This document shows positions 4,045 through 63,534 of a stretch of 64,000 bases of DNA, piece by piece (position 1 is the stretch's first letter; the number at the start of each line of letters is the position of its first letter). The stretch spans positions 248,001 to 312,000 of the IMG/VR virus record IMGVR_UViG_3300021137_000001, one strand, 5' to 3'. The position numbers and the translations under genes are program-made. A model generated the notes under the pieces. The model was not told the origin of the DNA. It was given only the letters and a program-made list of their open reading frames with translations, and made no database searches.

Positions 4045-4308
4045 ATGGCTAATACAGAAACAACCGTAGTAGAAGAACCAACGACTGCTGAACAAGCAGC
4101 ACCAGAACAAACCCCACCAAGTTTAGCGTTACAAGATTTAATTCTTGTTGCACAAATCATTCAACTTACATCAGCTCGCGGTGCTTTTAAAGCCGAAGAG
4201 TTGCAGAACGTTGGTGTACTTTATAACAAATTAATTGCATTTTTAGACAGCGTTGGTGCAATTACTAAGCAAGAAGAAACTGCTGCTCCGGAGAAACAAG
4301 ATGATTAA
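4045..4308 (+). CDS. hypothetical protein
   Basis: 87-aa ORF, strong SD AGGAGA. Confidence 0.7.
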   Translation: MANTETTVVEEPTTAEQAAPEQTPPSLALQDLILVAQIIQLTSARGAFKAEELQNVGVLYNKLIAFLDSVGAITKQEETAAPEKQDD

Positions 4309-4900
4309 TGAATTTAAACCAACTTGGCTTTATATTAAACAACATAAAGTCTCTGGTTTAAAATATTTCGGAAAAACAACTCGCGATCCCATTAAATATA
4401 ATGGGTCCGGTGTATACTGGAAAAGACATTTAATCACACACGGAAGTGAAATAACCACATTGTGGAGCCAATTATTTAATAATAAAGAATCACTAATCGA
4501 ATATGCACTTAACTTTTCACAAGAAAATAACATTGTCGATTCGACTGAATGGGCTAATCTTATTATCGAAAATGGATTAGATGGCGGCAATTTTCCAGGA
4601 GTTGGAAAAGGAAGAGTAATGTCCGAAGAAACAAAACAAAAATTAAGATTGGCTAATTTAGGAAAAAAGCAATCCAAAGAATCTGGTATTGCAAAATCCA
4701 TTGCATTAACTGGTAAATCATTAACCGAGCAACATAAAGCAAAGTTACGTAAAGAAAAACCATTGCGAACTGAATTGCATTCGATTGCAATATCAACTGC
4801 TAGAAAAGGTAAGCCATGGTCAGATGCAAGGCGCAGTTCGCAAGAAAGAAGAGATGTAGATAAAAGTAACTCAAATAATTTAAAGGAAAATATAGTATGA
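4301..4900 (+). CDS. GIY-YIG-like homing endonuclease with NUMOD3-like repeats
   Basis: LYIK..KYFGKT..YNGSG..W and ANL..ENGLDGG; tail repeats MSEETKQKLR / LTEQHKAKLR; start moved to ATG 4301 after GGAG. Confidence 0.75.
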   Translation: MINEFKPTWLYIKQHKVSGLKYFGKTTRDPIKYNGSGVYWKRHLITHGSEITTLWSQLFNNKESLIEYALNFSQENNIVDSTEWANLIIENGLDGGNFPGVGKGRVMSEETKQKLRLANLGKKQSKESGIAKSIALTGKSLTEQHKAKLRKEKPLRTELHSIAISTARKGKPWSDARRSSQERRDVDKSNSNNLKENIV

Positions 4901-5601
4901 TAAAACATGTCGGCAGACACAATAACAAGAGAGTTGTTATTGCATATAAGCAAGTTCCAGATGAAGATCATATGTGTTTGGTAATTTACAGTGAATCATT
5001 ACCAATGCGTATTCATGATGAAGTAATGAAAGTATTAGAAAGCGAAGTTGGTCAGCAGGCAAATGATTTTGCTGATGCACTATTCCGTCATACTATGGCA
5101 GATGGTGTTAATTGCTTAAATGCAATTCATCGTGGTGGTTTATTATCTAAGGTACCAACTAACCAAGTTATCGTAACACCAACTTCAGCTAGTTCAGTAC
5201 GCTTAGATGAGTTAAACACAATCCTTAACGAAATGGCTAAAGGTAAAGAAGCAACTGAAAAATTAGCCAATGTTGATGCAGGTCAACGTTTCGAAGGCAG
5301 AGATTTGGGCGAGCCAGCAAAAGCGGCAAGTGTAAATACAACTTCAGCTAGTGTTAATACAGATGGTGTACTATCTGACGCAGACATTGCTAATCAACGT
5401 ACAGCTCAAGCTAACAAGTTACGTGCAGATGCACAAGGCTTACTAGCAGAAGCAACACGTTTAGATAACGAAGCAAACGCACTTGCACCTAAGGTAACTA
5501 AGGCAAAAGTAACTAAGGCAAAAGCAACTACTACAGCAACAACTACACCTGCGAAGAAAACAAATGCCAGAAAACCTGCCACCAAAAAAGCCGCGGCGTA
5601 A
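4897..5601 (+). CDS. hypothetical protein with Ala/Lys/Thr-rich C-terminal tail
   Basis: 234-aa ORF; tail KVTKAKVTKAKATT...KKAAA. Confidence 0.7.
   Translation: MIKHVGRHNNKRVVIAYKQVPDEDHMCLVIYSESLPMRIHDEVMKVLESEVGQQANDFADALFRHTMADGVNCLNAIHRGGLLSKVPTNQVIVTPTSASSVRLDELNTILNEMAKGKEATEKLANVDAGQRFEGRDLGEPAKAASVNTTSASVNTDGVLSDADIANQRTAQANKLRADAQGLLAEATRLDNEANALAPKVTKAKVTKAKATTTATTTPAKKTNARKPATKKAAA
5494..5523 (+). repeat. 15-bp tandem repeat x2 (GTAACTAAGGCAAAA), in frame
   Basis: Copies at 5494-5508 and 5509-5523 encode VTKAK twice. Confidence 0.85.
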
Positions 5602-5917
5602 GCCGACTCCCGGTAAGAAACTTAATTTAAATATTAAGAAGCGTTGGCAAGATATTGTTAGAGGTGTTGATAAAAAGGAAGTACCAGTAGATGTGTTACA
5701 ACGTATTGTTGTTAAGCTAATCGATGGTACTGACCTTAGTATTGATATTAAGCAATTACTTGCAGACGGACAGCACCCTGATGACATTGAGGATTTACTC
5801 AATTCTAAGTTTGCTGACCTCGACGAGTTTATCGAAACAGTAGACTTCTTTATTGATATCGATAAAGTAGTTAACACAGTTCAGCCTGAGACAGACAAGG
5901 TACTTAAAAACCTATGA
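5564..5917 (+). CDS. hypothetical protein
   Basis: 117-aa ORF overlapping both neighbours. Confidence 0.65.
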   Translation: MPENLPPKKPRRKPTPGKKLNLNIKKRWQDIVRGVDKKEVPVDVLQRIVVKLIDGTDLSIDIKQLLADGQHPDDIEDLLNSKFADLDEFIETVDFFIDIDKVVNTVQPETDKVLKNL

Positions 5918-6417
5918 TTATATCAATACTTGCCAGCACCAATACAGGCGGTATTGGGAATAGGGGTACCTTACCTTGGCCCAAACATTCCGAAGATATG
6001 AAGTGGTTTAAAGACCACACAGAGAATCAAATTGTTGTTATGGGTCGCAATACTTGGGATGATCCTAAAATGCCAAAGCCACTACCTAATCGCATTAATT
6101 GTGTTGTTAGTAGTAAGCACGTAGCAACTAAGTATCAACATCAAGTACGTTGGATTCCTAGTAACCCCATAGAGAATATACTACAGTTACAGAAAGATAA
6201 CCCAACTAAAGATGTTTATATCATCGGTGGTAAACAGTTATACGAAGCAACAGAAAGCATTGTTGAGAAAATTTATCTTACACGTATCAAAGGTGCATGG
6301 TTTACAGACACACGTATTCAGTTAGATAGTATGCTTGCATGCTTTCAAATTAAATCTGTCAGACCCGGTGAGAACTGTACGTACGAAACGTGGGATAGAT
6401 CCTTCTTTTTCAATTGA
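5914..6417 (+). CDS. folA: dihydrofolate reductase
   Basis: GGIG..GTLPWP..SEDMKWFK, VVMGRNTW, LPNRINCV, IIGG, IYLTRI. Confidence 0.95.
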   Translation: MIISILASTNTGGIGNRGTLPWPKHSEDMKWFKDHTENQIVVMGRNTWDDPKMPKPLPNRINCVVSSKHVATKYQHQVRWIPSNPIENILQLQKDNPTKDVYIIGGKQLYEATESIVEKIYLTRIKGAWFTDTRIQLDSMLACFQIKSVRPGENCTYETWDRSFFFN

Positions 6418-6442
6418 CCTTTTGAACTAATTATGTTATAAT
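6414..6442 (+). promoter_or_regulatory. sigma70-type promoter with extended -10
   Basis: TTGACC (6414-19), 17-bp spacer, TG-n-TATAAT (6437-42); predicted +1 = 6449. Confidence 0.8.
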
Positions 6443-6448
6443 AGTATT

Positions 6449-7297: not shown

Positions 7298-7577
7298 AGT
7301 AGCCGACACTCATCGGGTGCGGTTTTTTACAAAAATGATGGATATGAATGACGTTGTTAACTTGCACAACAATGAGATATTTTGGAAGGTTGCAGAAGAA
7401 TTTAAACTAACTCCGCAAGCACAATGGGTCGAGGATAATGACATTAAACTTGCATTTATGGAAGATGAAATATATTATGCATGGGGCAAGATGTGTCTTA
7501 TATACGGCGATATAACAGAACGACAATATGTAGATTATAGCTTACGTTTCTTTCAACATCAGACGGACTGGAAGTGA
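7242..7577 (+). CDS. hypothetical protein (true start probably downstream)
   Basis: ORF filling the gap after thyA; start uncertain. Confidence 0.45.
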   Translation: MHSMAMNHSQALKHRWQSKVADTHRVRFFTKMMDMNDVVNLHNNEIFWKVAEEFKLTPQAQWVEDNDIKLAFMEDEIYYAWGKMCLIYGDITERQYVDYSLRFFQHQTDWK

Positions 7578-12860: not shown

Positions 12861-13263
12861 TTATATCCTTAGCAATCATATCTGCCCAACGTTCAGCATC
12901 TTGTTCTGTTACACGTATATCGTATGACTCTGGTGGTTCAAATAGTCGGTTTGTATCTTCAAATCGCCCTTCATTAATTGTGTCAACCCATATAACATAG
13001 TCGGCATCAAATATATCACGTATCTCTTGAGTAGGTGCAACAAAGTCGCATATACTATGTTGCCACCCATCGAACGCATCCATTGCTGCAAGTTGACTCA
13101 TTCTACTTGCTTGTCGCAGTCTACCTTCTATGCTAAAGTCCATATCGTTAAATTGTTTTCTTATCTCATCTGCATTGTGCCAAGTTGCATTTAATCTTTT
13201 TTGCAATGCTTCTGCTAGTGTTGTTTTACCTGCACCCGGCAAGCCCATTATTAGTATGTTCAT
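12850..13263 (-). CDS. adenylylsulfate-kinase-like P-loop kinase (short)
   Basis: GLPGAGKTT; NADEIR..F...DFS.EGR.RQ resembles CysC; 137 aa. Confidence 0.7.
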   Translation of the reverse strand: MNILIMGLPGAGKTTLAEALQKRLNATWHNADEIRKQFNDMDFSIEGRLRQASRMSQLAAMDAFDGWQHSICDFVAPTQEIRDIFDADYVIWVDTINEGRFEDTNRLFEPPESYDIRVTEQDAERWADMIAKDINET

Positions 13264-14756
13264 GATAACACTTTAACTCCGTATAGTTCTTCAAATCGAT
13301 CTGCATCAGCACGATCATTTACCATTGGTTCACCACGTACATTTAAACTTGTATTAAGCAACATCGGGCAACCTGTCCAAGTGTACCATAAGCATAATAG
13401 TTCACGTATGCCACTACCATCTCGCGGCACTGTCTGTACACGACTTGTACCATCAACATGTATTATAGCAGGAAATTCATTGGGACGCAAGCACTTTGCA
13501 GTTGTTTGCATATACGGGCTAGATTTAAATCCGTTAGGCATTTCAAAATACTCATCAGCAAACTCCTCCAGTATTATAGGAGCGAATGGGCGAAACTGTT
13601 GTCTACGTTTAATTAAGTTTACAGCATCTTTAATGTCAGTGCCACGTGGGTCAGCTAATAAACTTCTATTACCTAATGCTCTAGGACCAAACTCTGCACG
13701 TCCACTAGCAACACCAACAATCTTATTTGCCATTAACTCGGATACAACATCGGTGCAAGGATAAGGGCCAGGAATATCATGCCCAAGAAAAGCATTAGTC
13801 CAATTAAGTTTCCCACCATGCGCTAATGCTGCCGCTCCAAGGCTGCTACCAGCATCACCAGGATTAGGCATAATCCAAATGTTATCAAAGTATTCTCCTA
13901 AATCTCTATTAGCACTACAGTTAAGCGCAACACCGCCAGAGTATACTAAATTACTGTTAGGTGCGAGCATACTTGCTTTATACATTATATTATGTATTAG
14001 TTCTTCAGTAAGTGTTTGTGCTGCATTAGCAATCTCAAAGTCATTCCATTTAACTTTCATATCATTAGCGGGCAGCCCAATATGTAGATTGTGTTTTAAT
14101 GTTAGATTAAACTCATTGTTAACTAGCCAATGAGAAAGTTGATCGCTTAATCGGTGTGTTTTTTTCTTTGCCCAGCCAGCCATGCCCATTAATATGTATT
14201 CTTCATCCAGTGGACGTAAACCAACTTCTTTAGTAAATGCACTATACATCAAGCCGATACTATGCGGATATTTTTGTCCCCATACCTTATTATATTGTGC
14301 CCGACCGTTTTTGTAATATGCACTCCATATGCTTATTGTATCCCATTCACCAATTGCATCAATTACAACCACAGTTGCATCATCAAATGTACTTGTTTGA
14401 AAGCCTGCAGCCGCATGTGATAGATGATGATTGTATGTACTAATTGGGAGATGATATATCGGAGAGTTGGGTACCATCTTTTTAAGCATACCACGTACAG
14501 TCCACGGCGTTTTTAATTCACTGTATTGTCCAGCATAAAGCTGACGTGTCTTCTTAACCCACGGTCTTTCATAGTATGCAATTTGATCGGGCGAGCCGTA
14601 TGTTAATGCATCTGCTATTAGCGCACTGTTTAAGTTTGCGTCATGTTTAATCAGGCTATAGCGTTCAGCATGACCTGCAAAGACAATATCATCGCCTTTG
14701 ATTAATGTTACTGCTGCGTCATGAAACCCAGCACTAATTCCTAATATGTTGTGCAT
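13260..14756 (-). CDS. carbamoyltransferase (NodU/CmcH family)
   Basis: GFHDAA, ERYS, HHLSHA, DAIGE, GGVALN, PGDAG, EFGPRALGNRS, FRPFAP, LLNTSLN. Confidence 0.95.
   Translation of the reverse strand: MHNILGISAGFHDAAVTLIKGDDIVFAGHAERYSLIKHDANLNSALIADALTYGSPDQIAYYERPWVKKTRQLYAGQYSELKTPWTVRGMLKKMVPNSPIYHLPISTYNHHLSHAAAGFQTSTFDDATVVVIDAIGEWDTISIWSAYYKNGRAQYNKVWGQKYPHSIGLMYSAFTKEVGLRPLDEEYILMGMAGWAKKKTHRLSDQLSHWLVNNEFNLTLKHNLHIGLPANDMKVKWNDFEIANAAQTLTEELIHNIMYKASMLAPNSNLVYSGGVALNCSANRDLGEYFDNIWIMPNPGDAGSSLGAAALAHGGKLNWTNAFLGHDIPGPYPCTDVVSELMANKIVGVASGRAEFGPRALGNRSLLADPRGTDIKDAVNLIKRRQQFRPFAPIILEEFADEYFEMPNGFKSSPYMQTTAKCLRPNEFPAIIHVDGTSRVQTVPRDGSGIRELLCLWYTWTGCPMLLNTSLNVRGEPMVNDRADADRFEELYGVKVLS
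14740..14750. repeat. 11-bp direct repeat CCTAATATGTT, copy 1 (core of a ~30-bp degenerate duplication)
   Basis: Identical to 15564-15574; the two copies flank the HNH gene. Confidence 0.8.
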
Positions 14757-14785
14757 TTTGATAAATAAATTTAAAGGTGATTAAC

Positions 14786-15568
14786 ATGATATTTATTGAA
14801 AACAAATATACTAAAATTTATTATAGCATAATTGATTCTGCAAAGTCAAGAACTTTATCGCAGGAAACATACACAGAAAAACATCACACAATTCCCAAAT
14901 CACTTGGGGGCGACAATTCAACAGAAAACTTAGCGTCCTTGACTGCAAGAGAGCATTTTATATGCCATTGGTTGCTAACTAAAATGACTTCGGGCACATC
15001 AAAGCGTTCAATGGTTTTTGCACTAAGAATGTTAAAGGCTATGTCCACTAAGCACCAAAGATATGAAAGTTGTGTTACTGCCAAAGTGTATGAATCTATT
15101 AGAAAAGAGCACTCTGTATACCTTAGTAATATGCTTAAAGGGAGAATTGTTAGCGACGAAACTAGACACAAAATGTCTATTGCGGCAAAGAAAAAGACGC
15201 AAAATTCTTTTAAAGGGCATTCTCACAGTGAAGAAACAAAGGCTGCAATTGGGGATGCTAATAGGGGCAAACAAAGAACTGCCGAACAAAAAGAAAAAAT
15301 GTCGGCAGCACTTAGAGACATGTCAGTGAATCGTAGAGAAAAATTATCAGTTTATAAAAAGAATCATCCATTAACTGAGGATTCACTGAACAAAATTCGT
15401 AAATTATATGTCGTTACATTTCCAAACTGTACTACTGAGCAGACTAATAATTTAGCAGAATTTTGTAAAAACCACAAACTAAGTTTACCAGCAATGCGTG
15501 ATCAGGTTGCTAAAGGTAAACAAGAACATCACAATGGATACTGTGTTAAATCCATCCCAAAGACCTAA
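14786..15568 (+). CDS. HNH homing endonuclease (Mob-like) with NUMOD3-like repeats, antisense to the operon
   Basis: EKHHTIPKSLGG.N...NL..LTAREHFICH; repeats SDETRHKMS, HSEETKAAIG; TAAATA at 14762 and SD AAGGTG upstream. Confidence 0.88.
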   Translation: MIFIENKYTKIYYSIIDSAKSRTLSQETYTEKHHTIPKSLGGDNSTENLASLTAREHFICHWLLTKMTSGTSKRSMVFALRMLKAMSTKHQRYESCVTAKVYESIRKEHSVYLSNMLKGRIVSDETRHKMSIAAKKKTQNSFKGHSHSEETKAAIGDANRGKQRTAEQKEKMSAALRDMSVNRREKLSVYKKNHPLTEDSLNKIRKLYVVTFPNCTTEQTNNLAEFCKNHKLSLPAMRDQVAKGKQEHHNGYCVKSIPKT

Positions 15569-16184
15569 TATGTTCATAAATTTTATCCGCTACTATTGCA
15601 TGCCCTTCTTCTAAAAAATGACCGCCCGATCCCTGGGGTGTGCCGTATGTCCATTCAGCCATAGTTCCGATTGGCCACCCTATAAAGTTCGCTGAATCAA
15701 TTTGGTCTCGAATCGGTGCAAACTCGTCCGACCAACGCAGCATAATATTGTTGCCATATGCATCGAGCATAAGCAATTTCTTGCCTTGTTGTCGCACATA
15801 AGATTGTAATAAAATTATATTTGTCAGATATTGCTTATACAAATATTTGTCATTGTAATGTATTGTAATGTATTTTAATAATTCTGTTCGGTATGCAAGG
15901 TCTTTAGTAAATGTTAGTCCACGATATCCGGGCCATGTATCAAATATTCCATGCTCATCAGCAAATTCAATACGTGCAAAATGACTCCATGCAACAATTA
16001 TTAAATCATAATCTGCTGCCTGTTCAACTATTGTCCGTACCATACTAGTATTTCCCACACCGGGTTTCCCTAAATTAGTTAACTCACATGATAATTTAGT
16101 TTGTAATACATACGGCCATGCTTGCTTAACATCCGTTAGTTCGTCACCATATGTAAAGCTATCACCAACTGTTAATACTCTCAC
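15546..16184 (-). CDS. SGNH/GDSL-like protein
   Basis: GDSFTYG, G.GN, GHFLEEGH. Confidence 0.75.
   Translation of the reverse strand: MRVLTVGDSFTYGDELTDVKQAWPYVLQTKLSCELTNLGKPGVGNTSMVRTIVEQAADYDLIIVAWSHFARIEFADEHGIFDTWPGYRGLTFTKDLAYRTELLKYITIHYNDKYLYKQYLTNIILLQSYVRQQGKKLLMLDAYGNNIMLRWSDEFAPIRDQIDSANFIGWPIGTMAEWTYGTPQGSGGHFLEEGHAIVADKIYEHIRSLGWI
15564..15574. repeat. 11-bp direct repeat CCTAATATGTT, copy 2
   Basis: Identical to 14740-14750. Confidence 0.8.
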
Positions 16185-28705: not shown

Positions 28706-28775
28706 CATAAAAATAGGTAAGTGTTTATTCTTACCTATAGTGTACTACATTTATATTAGTATGTCAACTATTATG
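28706..28775. repeat. 70-bp direct repeat, copy 2 (same promoter plus hairpin)
   Basis: 68/70 identical to 27630-27699; -35 at 28762-67, -10 at 28739-44 (minus strand). Confidence 0.95.
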
Positions 28776-51968: not shown

Positions 51969-51987
51969 TATTTACTTCCTTATTTTA

Positions 51988-55188: not shown

Positions 55189-55191
55189 TTA

Positions 55192-56699: not shown

Positions 56700-56720
56700 A
56701 GTAAAACCTCTGTTATAGTG

Positions 56721-56726
56721 TATTTA
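56721..56726 (-). promoter_or_regulatory. late promoter TAAATA heading the structural operon
   Basis: TAAATA-CAC-TATAAC-AGAGG upstream of ATG 56699. Confidence 0.7.
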
Positions 56727-56771
56727 TTGTCGGAGAAATAGTAGCAGTTAAAGAATAACCAGATAAATAGG

Positions 56772-56800
56772 TTGTATAGCGCAATACTATATGTTATAAT
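56772..56800 (+). promoter_or_regulatory. sigma70-type promoter with extended -10
   Basis: TTGTAT (56772-77), 17-bp spacer, TG-n-TATAAT (56795-800). Confidence 0.75.
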
Positions 56801-56821
56801 AATTAAAAGGAATCTATTCAC

Positions 56822-56857
56822 ATCATAATAAGTAAAGTAAATTACCTAAATAGATAA
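56822..56857 (+). pseudogene. remnant 5' end of the gp55-like gene (..ISKVNYLNR*)
   Basis: Encodes KVNYLN, matching RVNYLN at the start of 57561; follows an orphan AAGGA. Confidence 0.6.
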
Positions 56858-56879
56858 ATATATAAAAGGTAATATAAAT

Positions 56880-57557
56880 ATGACAACTTATTATGTATAT
56901 GCATATATTCGTAGCAAAACTTCGCTAACTGCTAGCATCGGCACCCCGTATTATATAGGTAAAGGAATAGGGCAACGTGCGTTTACTAAACATAATTGTC
57001 CAGTTCCGATAGATAAAACAAATATTTTGTTTATTAAAGAAAATTTAACAGAAATTGACGCACATTTATTAGAAATACAGCTCATAGAACAATATGGGAG
57101 AAAAGATTTAGGCAACGGAATATTACATAATCAAACGAATGGCGGAGAAGGCATAAGCAATCCATCTAGCACTACTAGAGAAAAAATGGCGGCTGCTAAA
57201 AGAAATGAATCCGCTGATACTAGATTAAAACGATCAATTGCAGCAAAGAATAGAATCCGCACACCACTTAGCGATGAAACAAAACGTAAGATTAGCGAGG
57301 CTAATACAGGTAAAAAAAGAACAGACGATGCTAAATTAAAGCAGTCGGTTGCTAAGAAAGGTAGAACGTGGGAAGATATTTTTGGTATCGAAGAGGCAGC
57401 TAGAAGAAGGGATATACTTGCAAGTGACGAAGTTAAGTTAAAAATGAGTATAGCTGCGTGTAACAGAAGTGACGAAGGTGCCGCCAATATAGCTGAAGCA
57501 AATAGGAAAATTGGTATATTAAGAAAAGAAGCAAATAACAAATTAAAGGGTGTATAA
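56880..57557 (+). CDS. GIY-YIG homing endonuclease with NUMOD3-like repeats
   Basis: YYVYAY...PYYIGKG..R, E..LI..YGRKD, N.TNGGEG; SDETKRKIS repeats. Confidence 0.88.
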   Translation: MTTYYVYAYIRSKTSLTASIGTPYYIGKGIGQRAFTKHNCPVPIDKTNILFIKENLTEIDAHLLEIQLIEQYGRKDLGNGILHNQTNGGEGISNPSSTTREKMAAAKRNESADTRLKRSIAAKNRIRTPLSDETKRKISEANTGKKRTDDAKLKQSVAKKGRTWEDIFGIEEAARRRDILASDEVKLKMSIAACNRSDEGAANIAEANRKIGILRKEANNKLKGV

Positions 57558-57560
57558 TAT

Positions 57561-58460
57561 ATGGCAAGACGTGTGAACTATTTGAATAATAAAGACATTT
57601 TAAAAGAAATCGCTAAAAGTAAATTAACATATTGTAGTTTCATTAATAAAGATGTAACTATGTACGATGCTATTGTATTAAACGTAAGTGCAATTACTAA
57701 AAAATCCGTAGCAGAAGCCAGAGCAACAAGAGCAACAAGGCTTGCTAAAGAAGCACAAGAAGCTGAATTATTGCTCGGTAACAAACGCAAGTTAGATGAA
57801 TTTGCAATCCCAGTAGAAAATATCCCAGTAACAGACATTGTATTCCGTGTTATGACATGGGAACATATACCAATCGACGAAGTTAAACAGAAAAAATCCG
57901 ACGCTAAAGCACAAGAAGCGTACGACGAAGATTTGTTCGAAACTGAATACGATGAGCCTGCACCAGTTGTTAAAGTCAAAGGTGCTGTTAAGTACGTTAA
58001 ACTAAACTTTCCTCCTTTCTTTCATTATTCAGTAACCGAAGACTTAACTCCAATTGTTGTTGGTAAGAGTCACTGGAAAGGCGACTTTGAAACTGGCGGT
58101 TTTGTTAAAGATCATGGTAGCATGACGGCTAAGTTAGCTCATATGTTTGTTAAACTATGTGAACGCTATGCTACACGTAGTAACTGGCGTGGTTATACAT
58201 ACAATGACGAGATGCGTAGCCAAGCATTACTTCAATTAAGTCAAATTGGGCTACAGTTTGACGAAAGTAAATCAGACAATCCATTTGCTTATTATACAGC
58301 CGCAATTACAAACAGCTTTACTCGTGTATTAAACATCGAAAAGCGCAATCAAAATATTCGTGATGACATTTTAGAGATGAACAACTACGCACCAAGCTAT
58401 ACTCGACAGAATCAAGGCGGTAACTGGGGCGGTGGTGGTGGACACGGAGCCGACGAATAA
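57561..58460 (+). CDS. 55: late-transcription sigma factor, T4 gp55-like
   Basis: VNYLNNKD.L, NWRGYTY.DEM, FDESKSDNPFAYYT...NSF.R....EK; synteny with gp47/gp46. Confidence 0.9.
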   Translation: MARRVNYLNNKDILKEIAKSKLTYCSFINKDVTMYDAIVLNVSAITKKSVAEARATRATRLAKEAQEAELLLGNKRKLDEFAIPVENIPVTDIVFRVMTWEHIPIDEVKQKKSDAKAQEAYDEDLFETEYDEPAPVVKVKGAVKYVKLNFPPFFHYSVTEDLTPIVVGKSHWKGDFETGGFVKDHGSMTAKLAHMFVKLCERYATRSNWRGYTYNDEMRSQALLQLSQIGLQFDESKSDNPFAYYTAAITNSFTRVLNIEKRNQNIRDDILEMNNYAPSYTRQNQGGNWGGGGGHGADE

Positions 58461-58473
58461 CCGCAAATTATTT

Positions 58474-58525
58474 TATCTGCCAGTCGCCCATAACTAAATA
58501 CATTTACAGGGGATTGGCAGATATG
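58474..58525 (+). promoter_or_regulatory. late promoter inside SD/ATG-sequestering hairpin
   Basis: TATCTGCCAGTC-g-CCC pairs with GGG-GATTGGCAGATA; TAAATA at 58495-500 in the loop; ATG at 58523. Confidence 0.8.
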
Positions 58526-59185
58526 AAATACAAAAAAGATTACTATGGTTATGTATATGAATGGATAAATTCCACTAATAATATGAAATATATCGGATCG
58601 CATTACGGAGCAGTCGATGATTATTATAAAGGATCCGGCAAAGATTTTATGGTAGCATATAAAAATAACCCACAACACTTTACTATGAGAGTATTAGAAT
58701 ATGTTTCTGAAAACAATAAAAAATTAGTATTAGAAACAGAAAAAAAATGGCTTGATACAGTAGTAAATATTAAAGATGATCCAACATATTATAATCTCAA
58801 TAATGATGCGACAGGCGGATTTGGGTATTTAGATGAATCTCATATCGTTAAACGAGCAGAAACATTAAAGAAGAAACACGCTATCCACGGATTAAGTACC
58901 GAAGAAATACAATCATATAAGCAAAAAATACAAACCAGACTCGATAGAATAGCAACTACTGGGTTTACCGATAAAGAAAAAGAACAACATGCAAAATACG
59001 GAATTAAATTACAAGTCACCTTACCCTCAGGAGAAGTACGAATATATAATTCCATCGGGGCTGCCGAACGTGAGTTAAAACTTAACATTAAGTATGGATT
59101 AAAAATATGTGCCAAAAAACTTGACTTCAAAGGGTACATTCTAGTAAAATTAAATGAACCACTAATCGATTGTAGGAAAAAATGA
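58523..59185 (+). CDS. GIY-YIG (Seg-like) homing endonuclease
   Basis: GYVYEW.N..N.MKYIGSH, Y.GSG, E..WL, YYNLNN.A.GG; start moved to ATG 58523. Confidence 0.85.
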   Translation: MKYKKDYYGYVYEWINSTNNMKYIGSHYGAVDDYYKGSGKDFMVAYKNNPQHFTMRVLEYVSENNKKLVLETEKKWLDTVVNIKDDPTYYNLNNDATGGFGYLDESHIVKRAETLKKKHAIHGLSTEEIQSYKQKIQTRLDRIATTGFTDKEKEQHAKYGIKLQVTLPSGEVRIYNSIGAAERELKLNIKYGLKICAKKLDFKGYILVKLNEPLIDCRKK

Positions 59186-60195
59186 ATTTATTCAAAAAAG
59201 CTGCGGTATTTACAGATTTACATCTAGGACTAAAGTCAAATAGTACACAACATAATGAAGATTGCCTTGCGTACATTAAATGGTTTATTAGTAATGCAAA
59301 AAAAGAAGGGTGCGATGTTTGCTTTTTTCTTGGAGACTATCATAATAATCGAGCGGCAATTAATGTAGTCACGTTAAACTATAGCCTAACAGCGTTAGAG
59401 TTGTTGGGCAAAGCGTTTGACCGTGTTATCTTTATTCCGGGCAATCATGATTTATATTATCGTGACAAGCGTGATATACAATCTGCACAATGGGCAAAGC
59501 ATATTCCAAACATTGAGATTATTAATGATTTCTATCAAGAGGGTGATGTAAGCATTGTTCCGTGGCTAGTAGGAGATGATCATAAAAAGATACAAAAGAT
59601 CAATGCAAAGTATATGTTCGGGCACTTTGAGTTACCGGGCTATTATATGAATGCAATGGTGCAAATGCCAGAGCACGGTGAGATTAGACGTGAGGATTTT
59701 GGGCATATTGATCATGTGTACAGTGGGCATTTTCATAAACGTCAAACAGGTAAGAATATTACATATATTGGCAATGCGTTTCCACATAATTATGCAGATG
59801 CAGGTGATGATGAACGTGGTATGATGATACTTAACTGGGGAGAAGAGCCAACGTTTCATGCATGGCCTGATCAACCCAAGTATCGTGTATACACACTAAG
59901 CGACATTTTGCAAACTCCAGATACGTTGTTACAAAAAGGTATGCACTGTCGAGTAAACATCGACGTGGATATTTCATATGAAGAAGCAACATTTATTAAA
60001 GAAACTTTTGTAGGTACATATAATTTGCGTGAGCTTACATTAATTCCAGTAAAGCACACTGATATCGGCACAGATATTATGCTAGGCAATATTCAATTCG
60101 AAAGTATTGATACAATCGTGACAAGTCAACTAACAGCTATCAACAGTGAGCATTATAATCCAGCATTGTTATTAGACATCTATAGGAATTTATAA
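59182..60195 (+). CDS. 47: recombination endonuclease subunit, gp47/Mre11/SbcD-like
   Basis: DLH, GD, GNHD, GHFE, GHFH metallophosphoesterase motifs. Confidence 0.93.
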   Translation: MNLFKKAAVFTDLHLGLKSNSTQHNEDCLAYIKWFISNAKKEGCDVCFFLGDYHNNRAAINVVTLNYSLTALELLGKAFDRVIFIPGNHDLYYRDKRDIQSAQWAKHIPNIEIINDFYQEGDVSIVPWLVGDDHKKIQKINAKYMFGHFELPGYYMNAMVQMPEHGEIRREDFGHIDHVYSGHFHKRQTGKNITYIGNAFPHNYADAGDDERGMMILNWGEEPTFHAWPDQPKYRVYTLSDILQTPDTLLQKGMHCRVNIDVDISYEEATFIKETFVGTYNLRELTLIPVKHTDIGTDIMLGNIQFESIDTIVTSQLTAINSEHYNPALLLDIYRNL

Positions 60196-60231
60196 TTGTT
60201 TAAAATAAAAAATCTTACAGTTAACAGGTAA
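60196..60231 (+). pseudogene. remnant 5' end of gp46 (TTG-FKIKNLTVNR*)
   Basis: Matches MAFRIKNLTV at 60851; 14-bp exact repeat at 60205-18 and 60863-76; AGGAA 7 nt upstream. Confidence 0.7.
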
Positions 60232-60234
60232 ATG

Positions 60235-60242
60235 TATAAATA
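60235..60242 (+). promoter_or_regulatory. T4-consensus late promoter TATAAATA
   Basis: Exact consensus upstream of AGGAG and ATG 60261. Confidence 0.75.
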
Positions 60243-60260
60243 GTTATATAGGAGTAATAT

Positions 60261-60851
60261 ATGGCTAAAAGAAGAATATTTACAGAGGACGAATTGAATT
60301 TAATCATTGATTTACAACGGTCGGTTACTGAGATATGCTTACTAGTTAGTGCATCACATCCAACAATAACTAAGATCAGAAAAGAGGTAGGTATCGTTAC
60401 TATTAGAGGTAGGAGAGGTGGGTCTGTTGTTCCGTCTCAACGAAGAACTATTTACTGTGTATGCCAGAATGCGGCGTGTAAAAAAGAATTCGAATCAATA
60501 AAATCAACTCCTCGTAAATTTTGTAGCCACACGTGCCAACAACGAGCTGCAAATGTTGCTGCAAAAGGAATCGGTTCAAGAAAAATGCGTAACCCTAACA
60601 CTCCTGTATATAAAAAATATGCTAGAATAGTACATGGGATGAGTCATAAGATATATTTGTCAAACATAGCTATTATTAACCCTAATGGATATGTTAGAAC
60701 ATTATGCGGAGTTAAAGATGGATGGCAATTAGATCATATCATTCCTATTAAGGAATGTTTTGAAAGAAATATACCCCCAGAAGAGGCAGCTAGTATTAAT
60801 AATCTTAGGATGCTTCCATGGAAAGATAATTTAATGAGACAATATAAATAA
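60261..60851 (+). CDS. HNH homing endonuclease with N-terminal HTH-like and Cys-rich DNA-binding region
   Basis: C....C..EF......KFCS..CQ; C-terminal LDHIIP........NNL..L....N. Confidence 0.8.
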   Translation: MAKRRIFTEDELNLIIDLQRSVTEICLLVSASHPTITKIRKEVGIVTIRGRRGGSVVPSQRRTIYCVCQNAACKKEFESIKSTPRKFCSHTCQQRAANVAAKGIGSRKMRNPNTPVYKKYARIVHGMSHKIYLSNIAIINPNGYVRTLCGVKDGWQLDHIIPIKECFERNIPPEEAASINNLRMLPWKDNLMRQYK

Positions 60852-62623
60852 TGGCATTCCGTATAAAAAATCTTACCGTGAAAAATTTCATGAGTGTTGG
60901 TAATGCAACGCAAGCAGTGGACTTTGATCGCAATGATCTCACGTTAGTGCTTGGTGTCAATGTTGATTTAGGTGGTGACGACAGCGGCGCACGTAACGGC
61001 ACTGGTAAAACAACTATCATCAATGCGTTAAGCTACAGTTTGTTTGGGCAAGCGTTGACTAATATTAAACGTGATAACTTAATTAATAAAACTAATGGTA
61101 AGAACATGTTAGTCACAGTTGAGTTCGAACATAACGGGCAAGATTATAAGATTGAGCGTGGACGTAAGCCAAACGTAATGAAGTTTTACGTGGGTGATGA
61201 AGAAAAAGAAATTACAGACGAATCGCAAGGTGATAGCAGAGAAACGCAAGCTGAGATTGAGCGTATGTTAAGCATGAAGCATGATATGTTTAAACACATT
61301 GTTGCTCTTAACACGTACACTGAACCGTTCCTTAGTTTAAAGTCGGGTGATCAACGTGAGATCATCGAGCAGCTACTCGGTATTACTATGCTTAGTGAAA
61401 AGGCTGAGAATTTAAAAGAGTTGACTCGTGCTACAAAGGATGCAATTCAGCAAGAAGAATACAGTATTAAGGCGATTGCAGACGCAAACGGACGCATAAA
61501 AGAACAAATTGAGAGCTTAATTCGTCGACAAAATATGTGGACTACTAAGCACACAGATGATGCAGCAAAGTTAGAAAATGCGTTAGCAGAGTTGCATAAA
61601 ATTGATATTGAACAAGAACTTGCAGCACACACTGCGCTTACTGCATATAATCAACAGCGCAAAGACTTAGATGATTTGGGTAAAGCTATATTGCGTGGTG
61701 AGGCAGATATTGCTCGCGAACAAAAAACTATAGACAAAGTTACTAAAGAAATTGCCGATTTAGAAGCGCACACTTGCTATGCTTGCGGGCAACATTTTCA
61801 TGATGATAAACATGAGTCGGTATTAGCGGCTAAACGTGTTTCACTTGAAACCGCAACAAATCAATATTTGTCAGATCAATCACAGTTGCTTGCACTTACT
61901 GGTGCTAAGGCAGAAATTGGTGCCCTTGGTGCACAACCTCGAGTATATTATGATAAAGAAGCAGATGCATTCCATCATAAAGGTTCAATTACTAGTTTAG
62001 AAACACAGTTAGCAACTAAGAGTGCGGAAGTTGACCCATATGCTGAACAGATTGAAGAAATGACGCATACTGCTATGGCAGAAACTGATTTTACTACAAT
62101 GAATGAGCTCGTTAAGTTAAAGGAACATCAAGACTTCTTGTTAAAACTATTAACTAACAAAGATAGCTTTATCCGTAAGCGTATTATTGATCAGAACTTG
62201 TCGCATCTAAACGCAAGATTAAGTCAATACTTAGATCGCATCGGATTGCCACACACAGTAACGTTCTTAAATGATTTAAGCGTTGAAATTACAGAGCTTG
62301 GGCGCGAGTTAGACTTTGATAATTTATCACGTGGTGAACGTAATCGCTTGATCTTAAGTTTAAGCTGGGCGTTCCGTGATGTGTGGGAGAGTTTATACAA
62401 TCCGATTAACTTATTGTTTATTGATGAGCTTATTGATAGTGGCATGGACAGTAGCGGAGTTGAAAGTTCACTAGGCATACTTAAAAAGATGTCGCGTGAA
62501 CATGAGAAAAGTATTTGGCTTGTTTCGCACAAAGACGAACTTGCGGGTCGTGTAAACAATATCATGACTGTAACAAAAGAGAATGGGTTTACTACATACA
62601 GCACCGACGTTGAAGTAATTTAA
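60851..62623 (+). CDS. 46: recombination ATPase subunit, gp46/Rad50/SbcC-like
   Basis: NGTGKTT, coiled coil with CYAC zinc hook, LSRGE, LFIDE, SHK. Confidence 0.95.
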   Translation: MAFRIKNLTVKNFMSVGNATQAVDFDRNDLTLVLGVNVDLGGDDSGARNGTGKTTIINALSYSLFGQALTNIKRDNLINKTNGKNMLVTVEFEHNGQDYKIERGRKPNVMKFYVGDEEKEITDESQGDSRETQAEIERMLSMKHDMFKHIVALNTYTEPFLSLKSGDQREIIEQLLGITMLSEKAENLKELTRATKDAIQQEEYSIKAIADANGRIKEQIESLIRRQNMWTTKHTDDAAKLENALAELHKIDIEQELAAHTALTAYNQQRKDLDDLGKAILRGEADIAREQKTIDKVTKEIADLEAHTCYACGQHFHDDKHESVLAAKRVSLETATNQYLSDQSQLLALTGAKAEIGALGAQPRVYYDKEADAFHHKGSITSLETQLATKSAEVDPYAEQIEEMTHTAMAETDFTTMNELVKLKEHQDFLLKLLTNKDSFIRKRIIDQNLSHLNARLSQYLDRIGLPHTVTFLNDLSVEITELGRELDFDNLSRGERNRLILSLSWAFRDVWESLYNPINLLFIDELIDSGMDSSGVESSLGILKKMSREHEKSIWLVSHKDELAGRVNNIMTVTKENGFTTYSTDVEVI

Positions 62624-62647
62624 TTTTACCATCCACTACAGGGTGGT

Positions 62648-62661
62648 TAAATACATATAAC
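62648..62661 (+). promoter_or_regulatory. late promoter TAAATA-CA-TATAAC
   Basis: Upstream of AAGGAG and ATG 62679; preceded by small hairpin 62628-47. Confidence 0.65.
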
Positions 62662-62678
62662 AACAAGGAGAAGTAAAC

Positions 62679-62864
62679 ATGGCAATTCATGATGATATTT
62701 TAGCAGCAGTAGAATTATACGTTTCAGAATCAGAAAAATTTGAAGTTAAAGGTGTTAAAGCTGCAGCGGCACGTGCTCGCGGTGCATTAGGCGATTTAGG
62801 TAAGTTAACTAAAGCTCGTCGTGCAGAAATTCAAACCAAAAAGAACGAACTGTCCGCTAAGTAA
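62679..62864 (+). CDS. histone H1-like Hc1-family small basic protein
   Basis: KG.KAAAARAR.AL..L.KL.K.RR.EIQ..K pattern. Confidence 0.7.
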   Translation: MAIHDDILAAVELYVSESEKFEVKGVKAAAARARGALGDLGKLTKARRAEIQTKKNELSAK

Positions 62865-62873
62865 TAACGGAAA

Positions 62874-62958
62874 ATGCTGACATTTTGAATAAATAGTAGT
62901 GTAGTTCGCGGGTGTAGGAACCCCAACTACTCTAACATTGTAAAGGAATGTCAGCATG
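62874..62958 (+). promoter_or_regulatory. structured leader: 11-bp outer stem, late promoter and inner hairpin
   Basis: ATGCTGACATT (62874-84) is the reverse complement of AATGTCAGCAT (62947-57); TAAATA 62890-95; GTAGTT..GGGT/ACCC..AACTAC 62901-30. Confidence 0.8.
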
Positions 62959-63534
62959 AATATTTATTACGTATACCAGTACCTTAGAGAAAAGGATTCG
63001 TCTACTGCTCTAGCAGGTACACCATACTATATAGGAAAAGGTAAGAACAACCGAGCATATATAGGACACAATAATAGAATACCTTCAAATAAAGAATATA
63101 TTCAAATTATTAAAGATAATTTAACTGAACAAGAAGCAATGGACCTTGAAATTATGCTAATTAAAAAATATGGTCGTAAAGATTTAGTAACAGGTATTTT
63201 AATAAATCTTTCAAACGGCGGCGAAGGAGCAAGCGGATCTGTTCGTTCGCAAGAGCACAAGACACGTATATCTCAAGCACAAACAGGAAAAATTGTTTCA
63301 GATTCAACAAGAGAAAAATTAAGTAAGGCATTATCAGGTAAAAAACGATCAGATATTGCTAAGTTTAATATTAGCAAAGCACACATAGGTCAAGTTCCTT
63401 GGAATAAAAACATACAAATGACAGAAGAGTGGAAGGCAAAACGCCCTTGGCATAGTTGTGATATTTGTGGTATTCAATCCCAAAACCTTACTAATATTAA
63501 AAGATTTCACAATAGCAATTGTAAAAATAAATAG
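62956..63534 (+). CDS. GIY-YIG homing endonuclease with NUMOD3-like repeats (same subfamily as 56880)
   Basis: YYVYQY...PYYIGKG..R, KYGRKD...GIL.N.SNGGEG; C-terminal CDIC..HNSNC. Confidence 0.88.
   Translation: MNIYYVYQYLREKDSSTALAGTPYYIGKGKNNRAYIGHNNRIPSNKEYIQIIKDNLTEQEAMDLEIMLIKKYGRKDLVTGILINLSNGGEGASGSVRSQEHKTRISQAQTGKIVSDSTREKLSKALSGKKRSDIAKFNISKAHIGQVPWNKNIQMTEEWKAKRPWHSCDICGIQSQNLTNIKRFHNSNCKNK

What the first reader, a model, noticed from the sequence alone, without database searches (positions are those of the whole stretch)
4290..63534. General pattern: HEG cassettes that repair the 5' end of the gene they invade
Seen: three independent loci (gp55, gp46, carbamoyltransferase), involving two nuclease families (GIY-YIG, HNH) and both orientations. 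Each shows an old 5' fragment upstream and a restored start downstream. Known: free-standing HEGs usually occupy intergenic sites, and integrative elements often restore a disrupted gene's end. Inference: an intron-free way to colonise essential genes by supplying a replacement N-terminus, which I have not seen described as a general rule.
Basis: inference. Interest (0 to 1): 0.75.

Follow-up and report, generated by a model that had tools for sequence, protein, structure and literature searches.

The report
Endonuclease cassettes carrying replacement gene starts
In this freshwater jumbo phage a few selfish nuclease genes sit inside the first codons of a host gene and carry a spare copy of those codons so the gene still works; this is rare but recurrent, also occurs in phage T4, and mirrors an arrangement known from fungal mitochondria.

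Summary
At gp46, gp55 and the carbamoyltransferase (CT), a second partial copy of the host gene's 5' end lies on the far side of a homing-endonuclease gene (HEG). HEG-less relatives from IMG/VR show these copies are homologous, not chance.

- At gp46, and at a fourth locus outside the window (a UDP-glucose dehydrogenase), the displaced copy is the native type. The working gene is foreign only over that same span.
- So the cassette is an HEG plus a ribosome-binding site and replacement first codons, sitting inside the gene at about +30 or +48.
- At gp55 the fragment is a fossil of another allele that travels with the cassette.
- At CT the "fragment" is the live 3' end of the upstream gene, which ancestrally overlapped CT by 38 nt. 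The same de-overlap exists without an HEG in two relatives.

It is not a general rule. Four of about 36 HEGs in this genome and one of 12 free-standing HEGs in T4 (mobC/nrdG) show it. That is still enriched over control genes (Fisher p = 0.003), and 3'-end duplications are not enriched.

Close precedents are the fungal mitochondrial endonuclease elements that carry foreign gene C-termini, and the T4 MobA element. I rate it a new variant of a known kind.

The parts
56825..56868 (+). Decayed relic of a gp55 5' end. The former ATG now reads ATA, there is an in-frame stop, and there are small indels. The allele type is L011-like, not that of this genome's nearest relative.
   Evidence: Alignment A1. 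37/40 identical to L011 gp55 nt 1-43 but only 33/43 to L250, while the adjoining upstream DNA is 130/132 identical to L250.
56873..56880 (+). TATAAATA (the T4 late-promoter consensus) abutting the GIY-YIG start codon.
   Evidence: One of only 3 copies in the window, where 12.1 +/- 3.3 are expected. All three lie at HEG cassette edges.
56880..57557 (+). GIY-YIG/NUMOD3 homing endonuclease gene upstream of gp55. Its last codons contain the RBS of gp55.
   Evidence: Pfam NUMOD3. PHROG 314 homing endonuclease, E = 3e-15. Absent from L250-L252 and from PA5oct.
57561..58460 (+). gp55-like late sigma factor, the working copy. Its first ~15-18 nt are foreign-type and the rest is native-type.
   Evidence: tblastn to PA5oct 'sigma factor for late transcription'. 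nt 1-18 are 12/18 identical and nt 19-300 are 274/282 identical to L250.
58523..59185 (+). SegE-like GIY-YIG HEG between gp55 and gp47. No convincing relic.
   Evidence: Pfam SegE_GIY-YIG. PHROG 314. Test scores 10/17, within the control range. Relatives have a 41-58 nt spacer here.
59182..60195 (+). gp47 (SbcD/Mre11-like nuclease subunit).
   Evidence: Pfam Metallophos. 49% identical to PA5oct gp47.
60196..60231 (+). Displaced native gp46 5' end: a TTG start plus 9 codons, homologous up to 60224, then 2 junction codons and a stop.
   Evidence: Alignment A4. 26/26 identical to L005/L006. Same position and TTG start as empty alleles L009/L010/L033/L034. Same junction in L013.
60235..60242 (+). 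TATAAATA, followed by AGGAG, upstream of the HNH gene. This is the cassette's own late-type promoter and RBS (inferred).
60261..60851 (+). HNH endonuclease gene between gp47 and gp46.
   Evidence: PHROG 1271 HNH endonuclease, E = 2.8e-6, and PHROG 5104, E = 4.7e-20. Weak Pfam HNH hit. The only homologue among 80 related loci is in L013, at the same junction.
60851..62623 (+). gp46 (SbcC/Rad50-like), the working copy. The first ~30 nt are foreign-type and the rest is native-type.
   Evidence: Pfam AAA_23/SMC_N. 78% identical in nt 1-36 and 97% in nt 37-72 to L005/L006. The 'TTCCGTAT' stretch is shared with the distant L011.
13260..14756 (-). Carbamoyltransferase, the working copy.
   Evidence: Pfam Carbam_trans_N and Carbam_trans_C.
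14786..15568 (+). HNH/NUMOD3 homing endonuclease gene, on the strand opposite to CT. The ORF opens at GTG 14777; the probable ATG is at 14786. Its stop lies inside the 3' end of the GDSL-like gene.
   Evidence: Pfam HNH + NUMOD3. PHROG 655 homing endonuclease, E = 3.5e-41. A 129-nt relic of it survives in L094/L095.
15546..15577 (-). Former CT start, which is also the still-coding 3' end of the GDSL-like gene (15546-16184).
   Evidence: In many relatives the two genes overlap by 38 nt here. In the window, L084, L090 and L094 the overlap is resolved into two copies.
4298..4900 (+). GIY-YIG-like/NUMOD3 HEG with no detectable relic.
   Evidence: Test scores 7/18.
62956..63534 (+). GIY-YIG/NUMOD3 HEG inserted between orf 62679-62864 and the conserved GIY-YIG-only gene. 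No relic.
   Evidence: Absent at this place in relatives. Test scores 6/13.
63539..63991 (+). Stand-alone GIY-YIG domain gene, conserved in most relatives. Its true start is ATG 63539, not GTG 63458.
   Evidence: Pfam SegE_GIY-YIG, E = 2e-36. Relatives align from residue 28. PHROG 447.

Best explanation
A minority of the free-standing homing endonuclease genes of this T4-like jumbo phage are not intergenic. They sit inside the first 10-16 codons of a host gene.

The mobile unit has four parts:
- a displaced, non-functional 5' piece of the host gene (the relic);
- often a late-type TATAAATA promoter;
- the HEG itself;
- at its 3' end, an RBS plus a replacement copy of the displaced codons, joined in frame to the rest of the host gene.

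I infer the following mechanism. The endonuclease cuts HEG-less alleles within the 5' coding region, at about the relic end. The founding insertion came from a donor that had the HEG just upstream of its own copy of the gene. Repair was homologous on the gene side and illegitimate on the other side, which left the recipient's own first codons stranded. From then on the relic serves as an exon-like left homology arm, and the cassette homes like an intron-borne HEG but without an intron. Its target site is split by the insert, and the part the cassette supplies is diverged, which should prevent self-cleavage.

Where the left crossover falls decides the relic's type. A crossover inside the relic leaves it native-type (gp46, UGD). 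A crossover upstream of it imports the relic with the cassette (gp55).

At the CT locus the same kind of event, or an earlier one, separated two genes that overlapped by 38 nt. Both the upstream gene's 3' end and the CT 5' end therefore had to be kept as separate copies.

Shown: the anatomy, homology to empty sites, allele types of each copy, presence/absence polymorphism, and enrichment over controls.

Inferred: the cleavage position, the founding event, self-immunity, and any role of the relic.
For: Empty-site comparison:
- PA5oct and about 35 of 71 related loci have gp47 and gp46 abutting or overlapping (ATGA, TAATG or TAA-TTG junctions).
- The window keeps such a TAA-TTG gp46 start after gp47, then the HNH cassette.

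Allele typing:
- The gp46 relic is 26/26 identical to nearest relatives L005/L006.
- The working gp46 is 78% identical to them in nt 1-36 and 97% in nt 37-72.
- At UGD the relic is 16 intact codons behind an unchanged promoter/RBS, native-type.
- The working UGD copy is 67% identical to L181 in nt 1-45 and 88-97% after that. Its first 60 nt best match distant alleles.
- At gp55 the upstream DNA is 130/132 identical to HEG-less L250. The relic is 92% identical to L011 but 77% to L250.
- The working gp55 copy is 12/18 identical to L250 in nt 1-18, then 274/282.

Age and unity:
- L013 has the same gp46 junction, although its HNH is only 49% identical and its gp46 72%.

HEG identity.

Enrichment:
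- The first 45 nt of the 5'-adjacent gene were compared with 150 nt beyond the intervening gene.
- The protein score reached 29 or more in 5/32 HEG tests against 8/333 controls (Fisher p = 0.003; Mann-Whitney U (MWU) p = 0.012).
- The top controls are tandem paralogues.
- The mirror test for 3' ends shows no enrichment.

Other support:
- In T4, mobC begins with the first 7 codons of nrdG at the nrdD stop, exactly where mobC-less T2 starts nrdG, and nrdG restarts at the mobC 3' end.
- HEG decay and loss are seen at CT: L094/L095 keep a 129-nt HNH relic.
- No group I or II intron or other Rfam family is in the window.
Against: - No biochemical evidence exists that any of these endonucleases is active or where it cuts. 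The equation 'relic end = cleavage site' is inference only.
- Only 4 of about 36 HEGs here and 1 of 12 in T4 show the signature, so it may be an occasional repair accident rather than a mode of life.
- The score threshold in the enrichment test was chosen after seeing the data. Nucleotide-level tests are not significant.
- At CT the duplication exists without an HEG (L084, L090), so duplication-first cannot be excluded there.
- At gp55 the relic is not native. The simple 'stranded own 5' end' reading fails there, and a second step (two-sided transfer of a relic-bearing cassette) must be assumed.
- The foreign tracts are short (15-45 nt) and rest on few substitutions.
- No exact donor allele was found.
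Confidence: 0.65

Rival explanations
1. Duplication first, HEG second. A short tandem duplication, for instance one that un-overlaps or un-couples two adjacent genes, created a new intergenic gap. An ordinary free-standing HEG later landed in that gap. On this reading the HEG neither caused the copy nor carries it.
For: At the CT locus, L084 and L090 have exactly the same de-overlapped GDSL 3' end followed directly by the CT ATG, with no HEG. The ancestral state there is a 38-nt overlap, so any insertion requires two copies.
Against: - At gp46 and UGD the two copies are of different allele types, and the foreign tract coincides with the relic span. A local tandem duplication does not predict that.
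- No HEG-less relative shows a duplicated gp46, gp55 or UGD start among 80 loci each.
- L094/L095 show the CT-locus HEG decaying in place, so L084/L090 may be hit-and-run derivatives.
Confidence: 0.2
2. The fragments are accidental scars of single illegitimate repair events. They have no further role, are inherited vertically and are slowly decaying. On this reading there is no cassette that spreads with its relic and replacement start.
For: - The frequency is low: 4/36 here and 1/12 in T4.
- The gp55 relic is visibly decayed.
- One-sided, microhomology-mediated repair during T4 intron homing is documented, as summarised in PMC2988022.
Against: - The gp55 relic is of a different allele type from DNA that is 98% identical to L250 right next to it, so it moved in with the cassette.
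- The same gp46 junction sits in two backgrounds only 72% identical.
- The gp46 and UGD relics are intact despite that age.
- In T4 the displaced nrdG codons are used as the mobC start.
Confidence: 0.25
3. Chance similarity. In an AT-rich genome, short matches between an intergenic stretch and a nearby gene start arise by chance or from shared translation-initiation signals.
For: - In the crude flank-versus-flank test, HEGs do not differ from 368 control genes (MWU p = 0.15 and 0.59).
- The gp55 match is only 5 residues by self-comparison.
- Some other candidates look like chance: the SegE-like HEG start against the gp47 start, and genome 177731-178429.
Against: Each fragment aligns in register with the real gene start of HEG-less relatives, including the flanking stop codon, RBS or promoter. 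Examples are 26/26, 37/40 and 43/48 nt identities at the expected position.
Confidence: 0.03

Closest known systems
Fungal mitochondrial mobile endonuclease ORFs (mORFs) that create hybrid genes: Allomyces macrogynus atp6; Glomus atp6, atp9, cox2, nad3; Rhizopus atp9; Mortierella cox2
   Same: - An endonuclease ORF is inserted within a host coding region.
- The element carries a foreign copy of the gene end it displaces, so a hybrid but intact gene results.
- The native end is left behind as an unused remnant beyond the ORF.
- The native and inserted copies differ in allele type (PMC3630166).
   Different: - There it is the 3' end (C-terminus), downstream of the gene, in organelle genomes, often with the ORF fused in phase to the host gene and mostly LAGLIDADG enzymes.
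- Here it is the 5' end with its RBS, in a phage, with a separate HEG ORF of the GIY-YIG or HNH type.
- In this genome 3'-end duplications beside HEGs are not enriched.
T4 MobA / gene 39-60 element (HNH HEG plus homR plus 50-nt bypass)
   Same: A phage HNH HEG is inserted inside a host ORF. The element encodes a region homologous to the host segment it replaces, and that region contains the nick site. The authors propose element-borne tails as a general way to keep invaded ORFs functional (bioRxiv 10.1101/2022.08.31.505936).
   Different: - MobA splits the host protein into two polypeptides, deletes the native segment rather than leaving it as a relic, and needs translational bypass.
- Here the host protein stays single and full-length, the native piece is retained upstream, and nothing suggests bypass.
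Free-standing seg/mob homing endonucleases of T4 with co-conversion of flanking markers (intronless homing)
   Same: - The same enzyme families and domain make-up.
- Sporadic distribution between conserved genes, with their own late promoters.
- Short foreign tracts next to the HEG (PMC2988022).
   Different: Textbook cases are intergenic, cut a nearby gene at a distance and leave no duplicated host sequence. The accessible review does not mention any duplication (no hit for 'duplicat'). T4 mobC/nrdG does have the signature.
Illegitimate (one-sided homology) double-strand-break repair in T4 intron homing (Parker, Belisle & Belfort 1999)
   Same: It provides the founding mechanism I invoke: homologous repair on one side and a microhomology junction on the other. 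It was proposed as a route to ectopic sites (as summarised in PMC2988022).
   Different: It is an experimental system with an intron.
I-TevI autorepression operator (a homing-site-like sequence overlapping its late promoter)
   Same: A partial copy of the enzyme's target lies directly beside the HEG's late promoter. Here the gp46, gp55 and UGD relics end 4-10 nt before, or abut, TATAAATA (PMC2988022 section 10).
   Different: Binding or repression is untested here. I-TevI is intron-encoded, and its operator is not known to be a displaced gene start.

Membership tests
Free-standing homing endonuclease genes (T4 seg/mob type) | The ORF encodes a GIY-YIG or HNH nuclease domain with DNA-binding modules (NUMOD etc.). 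| tested here: met
   Pfam NUMOD3, SegE_GIY-YIG and HNH. PHROG homing or HNH endonuclease families for all four relic-associated genes. HNH46 is the weakest (PHROG 1271, E = 2.8e-6; Pfam HNH 16.9 bits).
Free-standing homing endonuclease genes (T4 seg/mob type) | Presence/absence polymorphism at the same locus among close relatives. | tested here: met
   gp46; gp55 (L250-L252); CT; UGD. In run X16, depth over the HEG segments is several-fold lower than over the host genes.
Free-standing homing endonuclease genes (T4 seg/mob type) | Not embedded in a self-splicing intron or an intein. | tested here: met
   No Rfam family at gathering score in the window. Host ORFs are continuous and full-length against relatives.
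Free-standing homing endonuclease genes (T4 seg/mob type) | Site-specific cleavage of the HEG-less allele and biased inheritance in mixed infection. | not testable with these tools
   This needs enzyme assays or crosses. The host of this metagenomic phage is unknown.
Free-standing homing endonuclease genes (T4 seg/mob type) | Intergenic location. | tested here: not met
   Relative to empty alleles, the insertion points lie inside coding sequence: gp46 about +30, UGD +48, gp55 within the first codons. The other HEGs of the window are intergenic.
Fungal mitochondrial mORF hybrid-gene elements | The endonuclease ORF is inserted within a host gene and carries a foreign copy of the displaced gene end, which joins in frame to the rest of the gene. 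| tested here: met
   The foreign tract coincides with the relic span at gp46 and UGD. The first 18 nt are foreign at gp55.
Fungal mitochondrial mORF hybrid-gene elements | The native gene end persists as an unused remnant beyond the ORF. | tested here: met
   Relics at 60196-60224, 56825-56868 and L163:2505-2552.
Fungal mitochondrial mORF hybrid-gene elements | The affected end is the 3' end (C-terminus), and the element resides in an organelle genome. | tested here: not met
   The 5' ends are affected, in a phage. The 3'-end test gave no enrichment.
T4 MobA-gene 60 type element | The host ORF is split into two polypeptides with element-encoded C- and N-terminal tails. | tested here: not met
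   gp46, gp55, CT and UGD are single full-length ORFs.
T4 MobA-gene 60 type element | An element-encoded region homologous to the host segment around the cut site. | tested here: met
   The replacement 5' codons at the cassette's 3' end. The cut site itself is inferred.
T4 MobA-gene 60 type element | A translational bypass cassette. | not tested
   No coding gap is present in the host genes, so none is needed.

The most novel reading that the evidence does not exclude
There is a distinct, self-propagating class of phage homing cassette that lives inside its own target site within a coding sequence, without an intron or intein. The retained 5' relic acts as an exon-like left homology arm, and possibly as an operator beside the HEG's late promoter. 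The cassette's 3' end supplies the RBS and first codons. The class spans GIY-YIG and HNH enzymes, from T4 (mobC/nrdG) to freshwater jumbo phages. The relic end lets the endonuclease's cleavage site be read directly from genome sequence. As a side effect the cassette can un-overlap neighbouring genes.
Probability: 0.35. Interest if true: 0.7.

Novelty: new variant of a known kind. Interest (0 to 1): 0.55.

Why it matters
- Free-standing HEGs are taught as intergenic elements that cut at a distance. These loci show a second architecture in which the HEG occupies a site inside a gene and pays for it with a replacement gene start.
- If the relic end marks the cut, target sites of uncharacterised endonucleases could be predicted from sequence alone for roughly a tenth of phage HEGs. 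That includes T4 MobC, whose target is listed as unknown in the 2010 review.
- It explains short foreign tracts and tiny orphan ORFs at the 5' ends of conserved phage genes, which can mislead annotation and phylogeny.
- It links phage HEG biology to the hybrid-gene elements of fungal mitochondria.
- It offers a route by which overlapping or translationally coupled genes become separated.
- T4 mobC/nrdG versus T2 provides a ready laboratory system to test all of this.

Tried and rejected
- Megablast of both ends of the window against the phage collection found nothing.
- The crude flank-versus-flank repeat test did not separate HEGs from controls. I replaced it with a position-specific test.
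- The similarity between the SegE-like HEG start (58523) and the gp47 start is short and low-complexity, with control-range scores. I treated it as chance.
- The candidate at genome 177731-178429 (score 29) has no convincing alignment.
- The top-scoring controls turned out to be tandem paralogues sharing N-termini, which is a different phenomenon.
- I first read two tandem promoter-like copies upstream of gp55 (alignment A2) as traces of repeated invasion. I retracted this because HEG-less L250-L252 have the same two copies.
- Scanning 240 related loci for more independent events found only homologues of the same events.
- Laying contigs of four runs gave no clean HEG-less joint. It gave only intact junctions and lower depth over the HEGs.
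- Parker et al. 1999 and Sandegren et al. 2005 could not be read. Whether the T4 mobC/nrdG duplication is already in print therefore remains unchecked.
- I did not attempt structure or complex prediction, as it would not locate cleavage sites reliably.

Full report
WHAT THE WINDOW IS

The window is bases 248001-312000 of a 329,321-bp IMG/VR phage genome with direct terminal repeats. Runs that hold it are freshwater metagenomes. It is a T4-like jumbo phage whose nearest isolates are the PA5oct group of Pseudomonas phages (gp46 49.6% identical).

In PA5oct the gp55-like sigma factor, gp47 and gp46 are contiguous, with no endonuclease genes between them. In the window the order is different:
- a GIY-YIG gene (56880-57557);
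- gp55 (57561-58460);
- a SegE-like GIY-YIG gene (58523-59185);
- gp47 (59182-60195);
- an HNH gene (60261-60851);
- gp46 (60851-62623).

The carbamoyltransferase (CT, 13260-14756, minus strand) is preceded by an HNH/NUMOD3 gene on the opposite strand (14786-15568), and then by a GDSL-like gene (15546-16184, minus strand). The whole genome holds about 36 HEG-like ORFs. No Rfam family, and hence no recognisable group I or II intron, is in the window.

CHECK OF THE OBSERVATION, LOCUS BY LOCUS

I fetched 80 related loci each for gp46, CT, gp55 and a fourth gene from IMG/VR.

gp46
- The gp47-to-gp46 distance is bimodal. About 35 loci have the genes abutting or overlapping (ATGA, TAATG or TAA-TTG junctions). 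About 36 carry inserts of 0.65-4.3 kb.
- In the window the 29 nt after the gp47 stop (60196-60224) are a TTG-started gp46 5' end. This lies exactly as in empty alleles L009, L010, L033 and L034, and is 26/26 identical to the gp46 start of the nearest relatives L005/L006.
- Homology stops there. TATAAATA, an AGGAG and the HNH gene follow, and a complete gp46 starts at the HNH stop.
- L013, the only other locus with a homologue of this HNH (49% identical), has the same junction.

gp55
- Window 56825-56868 aligns in register with the first ~45 nt of gp55 of relatives and sits behind the conserved RBS (alignment A1). The former ATG now reads ATA, and there is an in-frame stop.

CT
- In many relatives the GDSL-like gene overlaps CT by 38 nt in another frame.
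- In the window the overlap is resolved. The GDSL gene keeps its own 3' end, which still begins with the old CT ATG plus 11 identical nt (15577-15564). The 789-bp HNH segment lies exactly between the GDSL stop and a new CT start.

All junctions recur in independent contigs (L003, L083, L249, L164) and in assembled contigs of other runs.

HOW GENERAL IS IT

A crude test for direct repeats between the two flanks of each gene did not separate 36 HEGs from 368 controls, although the three claimed loci were the three top HEGs.

A position-specific test was more informative. It compared the first 45 nt of the gene whose 5' end abuts the intervening gene with the 150 nt on the far side.
- Protein-level scores reached 29 or more in 5 of 32 HEG tests against 8 of 333 controls (Fisher p = 0.003; Mann-Whitney U (MWU) p = 0.012). 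The threshold was chosen after the fact, and the nucleotide scores were not significant.
- The best controls are tandem paralogues, which is a different phenomenon.
- The mirror test for duplicated 3' ends showed no enrichment.

The test uncovered a fourth, clearer case outside the window: a GIY-YIG HEG (genome 133584-134201) in front of a UDP-glucose dehydrogenase gene (UGD; PHROG 9148).
- Its HEG-less relatives L165-L181 start the gene with MSSQLKTVGF...
- The phage keeps that start, 16 intact codons behind an unchanged promoter/RBS.
- A second partial copy, TATAAATA, the HEG and a working gene that starts MNNVGF... then follow.

Four other HEGs in the window show nothing. In 240 related loci, no further independent events turned up.

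In T4, 13 tests on the free-standing HEGs gave one hit.
- mobC begins with the first seven codons of nrdG at the nrdD stop, exactly where mobC-less T2 begins nrdG.
- nrdG restarts inside the mobC 3' end.

So the pattern is recurrent, at roughly one HEG in ten, and is specific to 5' ends. It is not a rule.

WHICH COPY IS WHOSE

This is the key evidence for a cassette.

At gp46:
- The relic is native-type (26/26 to L005/L006).
- The working copy differs from those relatives at 8 of the first 36 nt (78% identical).
- It is then 97% identical over the next 36 nt, and shares a distinctive 8-mer with the distant L011 allele.

At UGD:
- The relic is native-type (43/48 to L181 by my count from the-60 sequences), behind an unchanged promoter/RBS.
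- The working copy is 67% identical to L181 in nt 1-45 and 88-97% afterwards. Its first 60 nt best match alleles whose bodies are only 63-68% identical.
- The foreign tract thus has the same length as the relic. The cassette sits at one point inside the gene (about +30 for gp46, +48 for UGD) and brings everything upstream of that point.

At gp55 the picture differs.
- The nearest HEG-less relative L250 (98% protein identity) is 130/132 identical to the window right up to the start codon.
- The relic is only 77% like L250's gp55 start, but 92% like the L011 allele.
- The working copy is foreign in nt 1-18 (12/18) and 97% L250-like afterwards.
- Here the relic is a fossil from another background that came in with the cassette. 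Together with the shared junction in L013, this shows that the relic, the HEG and the replacement start move or persist as one unit.

MECHANISM (INFERRED)

The founding event is best explained by double-strand-break repair with homology on one side only.
- The donor carried the HEG just upstream of its own copy of the gene.
- The break in the recipient lay in the first codons.
- The gene side was repaired homologously with a minimal conversion tract.
- The other end was joined illegitimately, which stranded the recipient's own start.
- This pathway is documented for T4 intron homing (summarised in PMC2988022).

Once formed, the relic gives homology right up to the break. The cassette can then home like an intron-borne HEG.
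- A left crossover inside the relic leaves a native-type relic (gp46, UGD).
- A crossover further upstream imports the donor's relic (gp55).

The insert splits the presumed target, and the cassette-borne half is diverged. For example, both cassette-borne gp46 starts read GTG where native alleles read GTT or GTC. That would give self-immunity.

Eight of 36 HEGs, against about 12 of 370 other genes, have TATAAATA just upstream. The window's only three copies (12 expected) all lie at cassette edges. The HEGs therefore appear to bring a late-type promoter, as in T4. In three cases the relic abuts that promoter, which recalls the I-TevI operator. That resemblance is only a lead.

THE CT LOCUS

Its 'old fragment' is functional coding sequence of the GDSL-like gene, kept under that gene's frame only.
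- L084 and L090 have the identical de-overlapped arrangement with no HEG.
- L094 and L095 have the same left junction with only a 129-nt remnant of the HNH gene.

There are two possibilities. The de-overlap may have preceded the HEG. Or the HEG caused it and has since been lost in some lineages, a hit-and-run of the kind proposed for MobA in Aeromonas phages. I cannot decide between these.

COMPARISON WITH WHAT IS KNOWN

The closest analogues are fungal mitochondrial endonuclease ORFs that carry a foreign C-terminal gene segment and leave the native one behind: Allomyces atp6; Glomus atp6, atp9, cox2 and nad3 (PMC3630166). The phage case is their mirror image, at the 5' end.

In phages, the MobA element of T4 carries a region homologous to the host segment it replaces. 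Its describers suggest element-borne tails as a general way to keep invaded ORFs working. That element, however, splits the protein and deletes the native piece.

The T4 mobile-element review and a recent survey of HEGs at recombination boundaries do not mention host-gene duplications beside free-standing HEGs. I could not read Sandegren et al. 2005 on mobC.

I therefore rate this a new variant of a known kind, not a new principle.

VERDICT AND LIMITS

The general-rule claim is rejected.

Limits:
- there is no enzymology;
- the foreign tracts are short;
- the statistical threshold was post hoc;
- the host is unknown.

Noticed in passing
T4 NC_000866 42906-43538 (L244), with T2 in L248: T4 mobC starts with the first seven codons of nrdG, at the nrdD stop where mobC-less T2 starts nrdG. 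nrdG restarts inside the mobC 3' end. The displaced host codons serve as the HEG's own start. The 2010 review lists the MobC target as unknown.
   Followed up: yes
L163:2505-2584 (genome 133504-133583), outside the window: Upstream of the UGD-locus HEG there are two successive partial copies of the gene's GxGxxG-coding start: 16 intact codons, then a 21-nt second copy that runs into TATAAATA. Counting the working gene, that makes three copies. HEG-less relatives have one.
   Followed up: partly
window 56873, 60235, 60843; genome-wide list: TATAAATA is strongly under-represented (3 in 64 kb against 12 expected). Its intergenic copies are concentrated just upstream of HEG starts: 8 of 36 HEGs against about 12 of 370 other genes.
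   Followed up: partly
gp47|gp46 junction in L004-L082: This junction is a hotspot for insertions in relatives. About half of the loci carry 0.65-4.3 kb of mostly non-HEG cargo (for example a radical-SAM-like ORF in L004). That cargo takes over the translationally coupled ATG and leaves no visible relic.
   Followed up: partly
window 63539-63991: A 150-aa protein consisting of a GIY-YIG (SegE-type) domain alone is conserved next to orf 62679-62864 in most relatives (35-96% identical). It looks resident or domesticated rather than mobile. The longest-ORF start (GTG 63458) is probably wrong.
   Followed up: partly
window 56696-56824: Two tandem promoter-like copies (a -35/-10-like region plus RBS-like motif) lie upstream of gp55. 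They are also present in HEG-less L250-L252, so they are ancestral to this subclade and unrelated to the HEG.
   Followed up: yes
window 18027-24505 (minus strand): Five consecutive ORFs of 399-461 aa with radical SAM and/or SPASM matches form a tandem array. Downstream on the same strand lie a GDSL-like gene, CT, a small P-loop kinase and a dCMP deaminase. This may be a modification pathway.
   Followed up: no
window 27695-28648 and 28771-29727 (minus strand); genome 70098/70521 and 210806/211299: Adjacent paralogous genes share nearly identical first codons (for example MSYAS...). They were the top scorers among the control genes in the duplication test.
   Followed up: partly
window 33393-45983 (minus strand): A single 4196-aa ORF, followed by ORFs of 1127, 711 and 1066 aa, in the structural region. 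Not examined.
   Followed up: no
window 57561-58460: The gp55 homologue is 299 aa with a glycine-rich acidic tail. PA5oct's is about 280 aa. From memory, T4's is 185 aa.
   Followed up: no
run X16 laid on window 56700-62690: In a lake metagenome from another study, contig depth over gp55, gp47 and gp46 is 25-64. It is 0-6 over two of the HEGs and 12 over the third. Most related strains there apparently lack these HEGs.
   Followed up: partly
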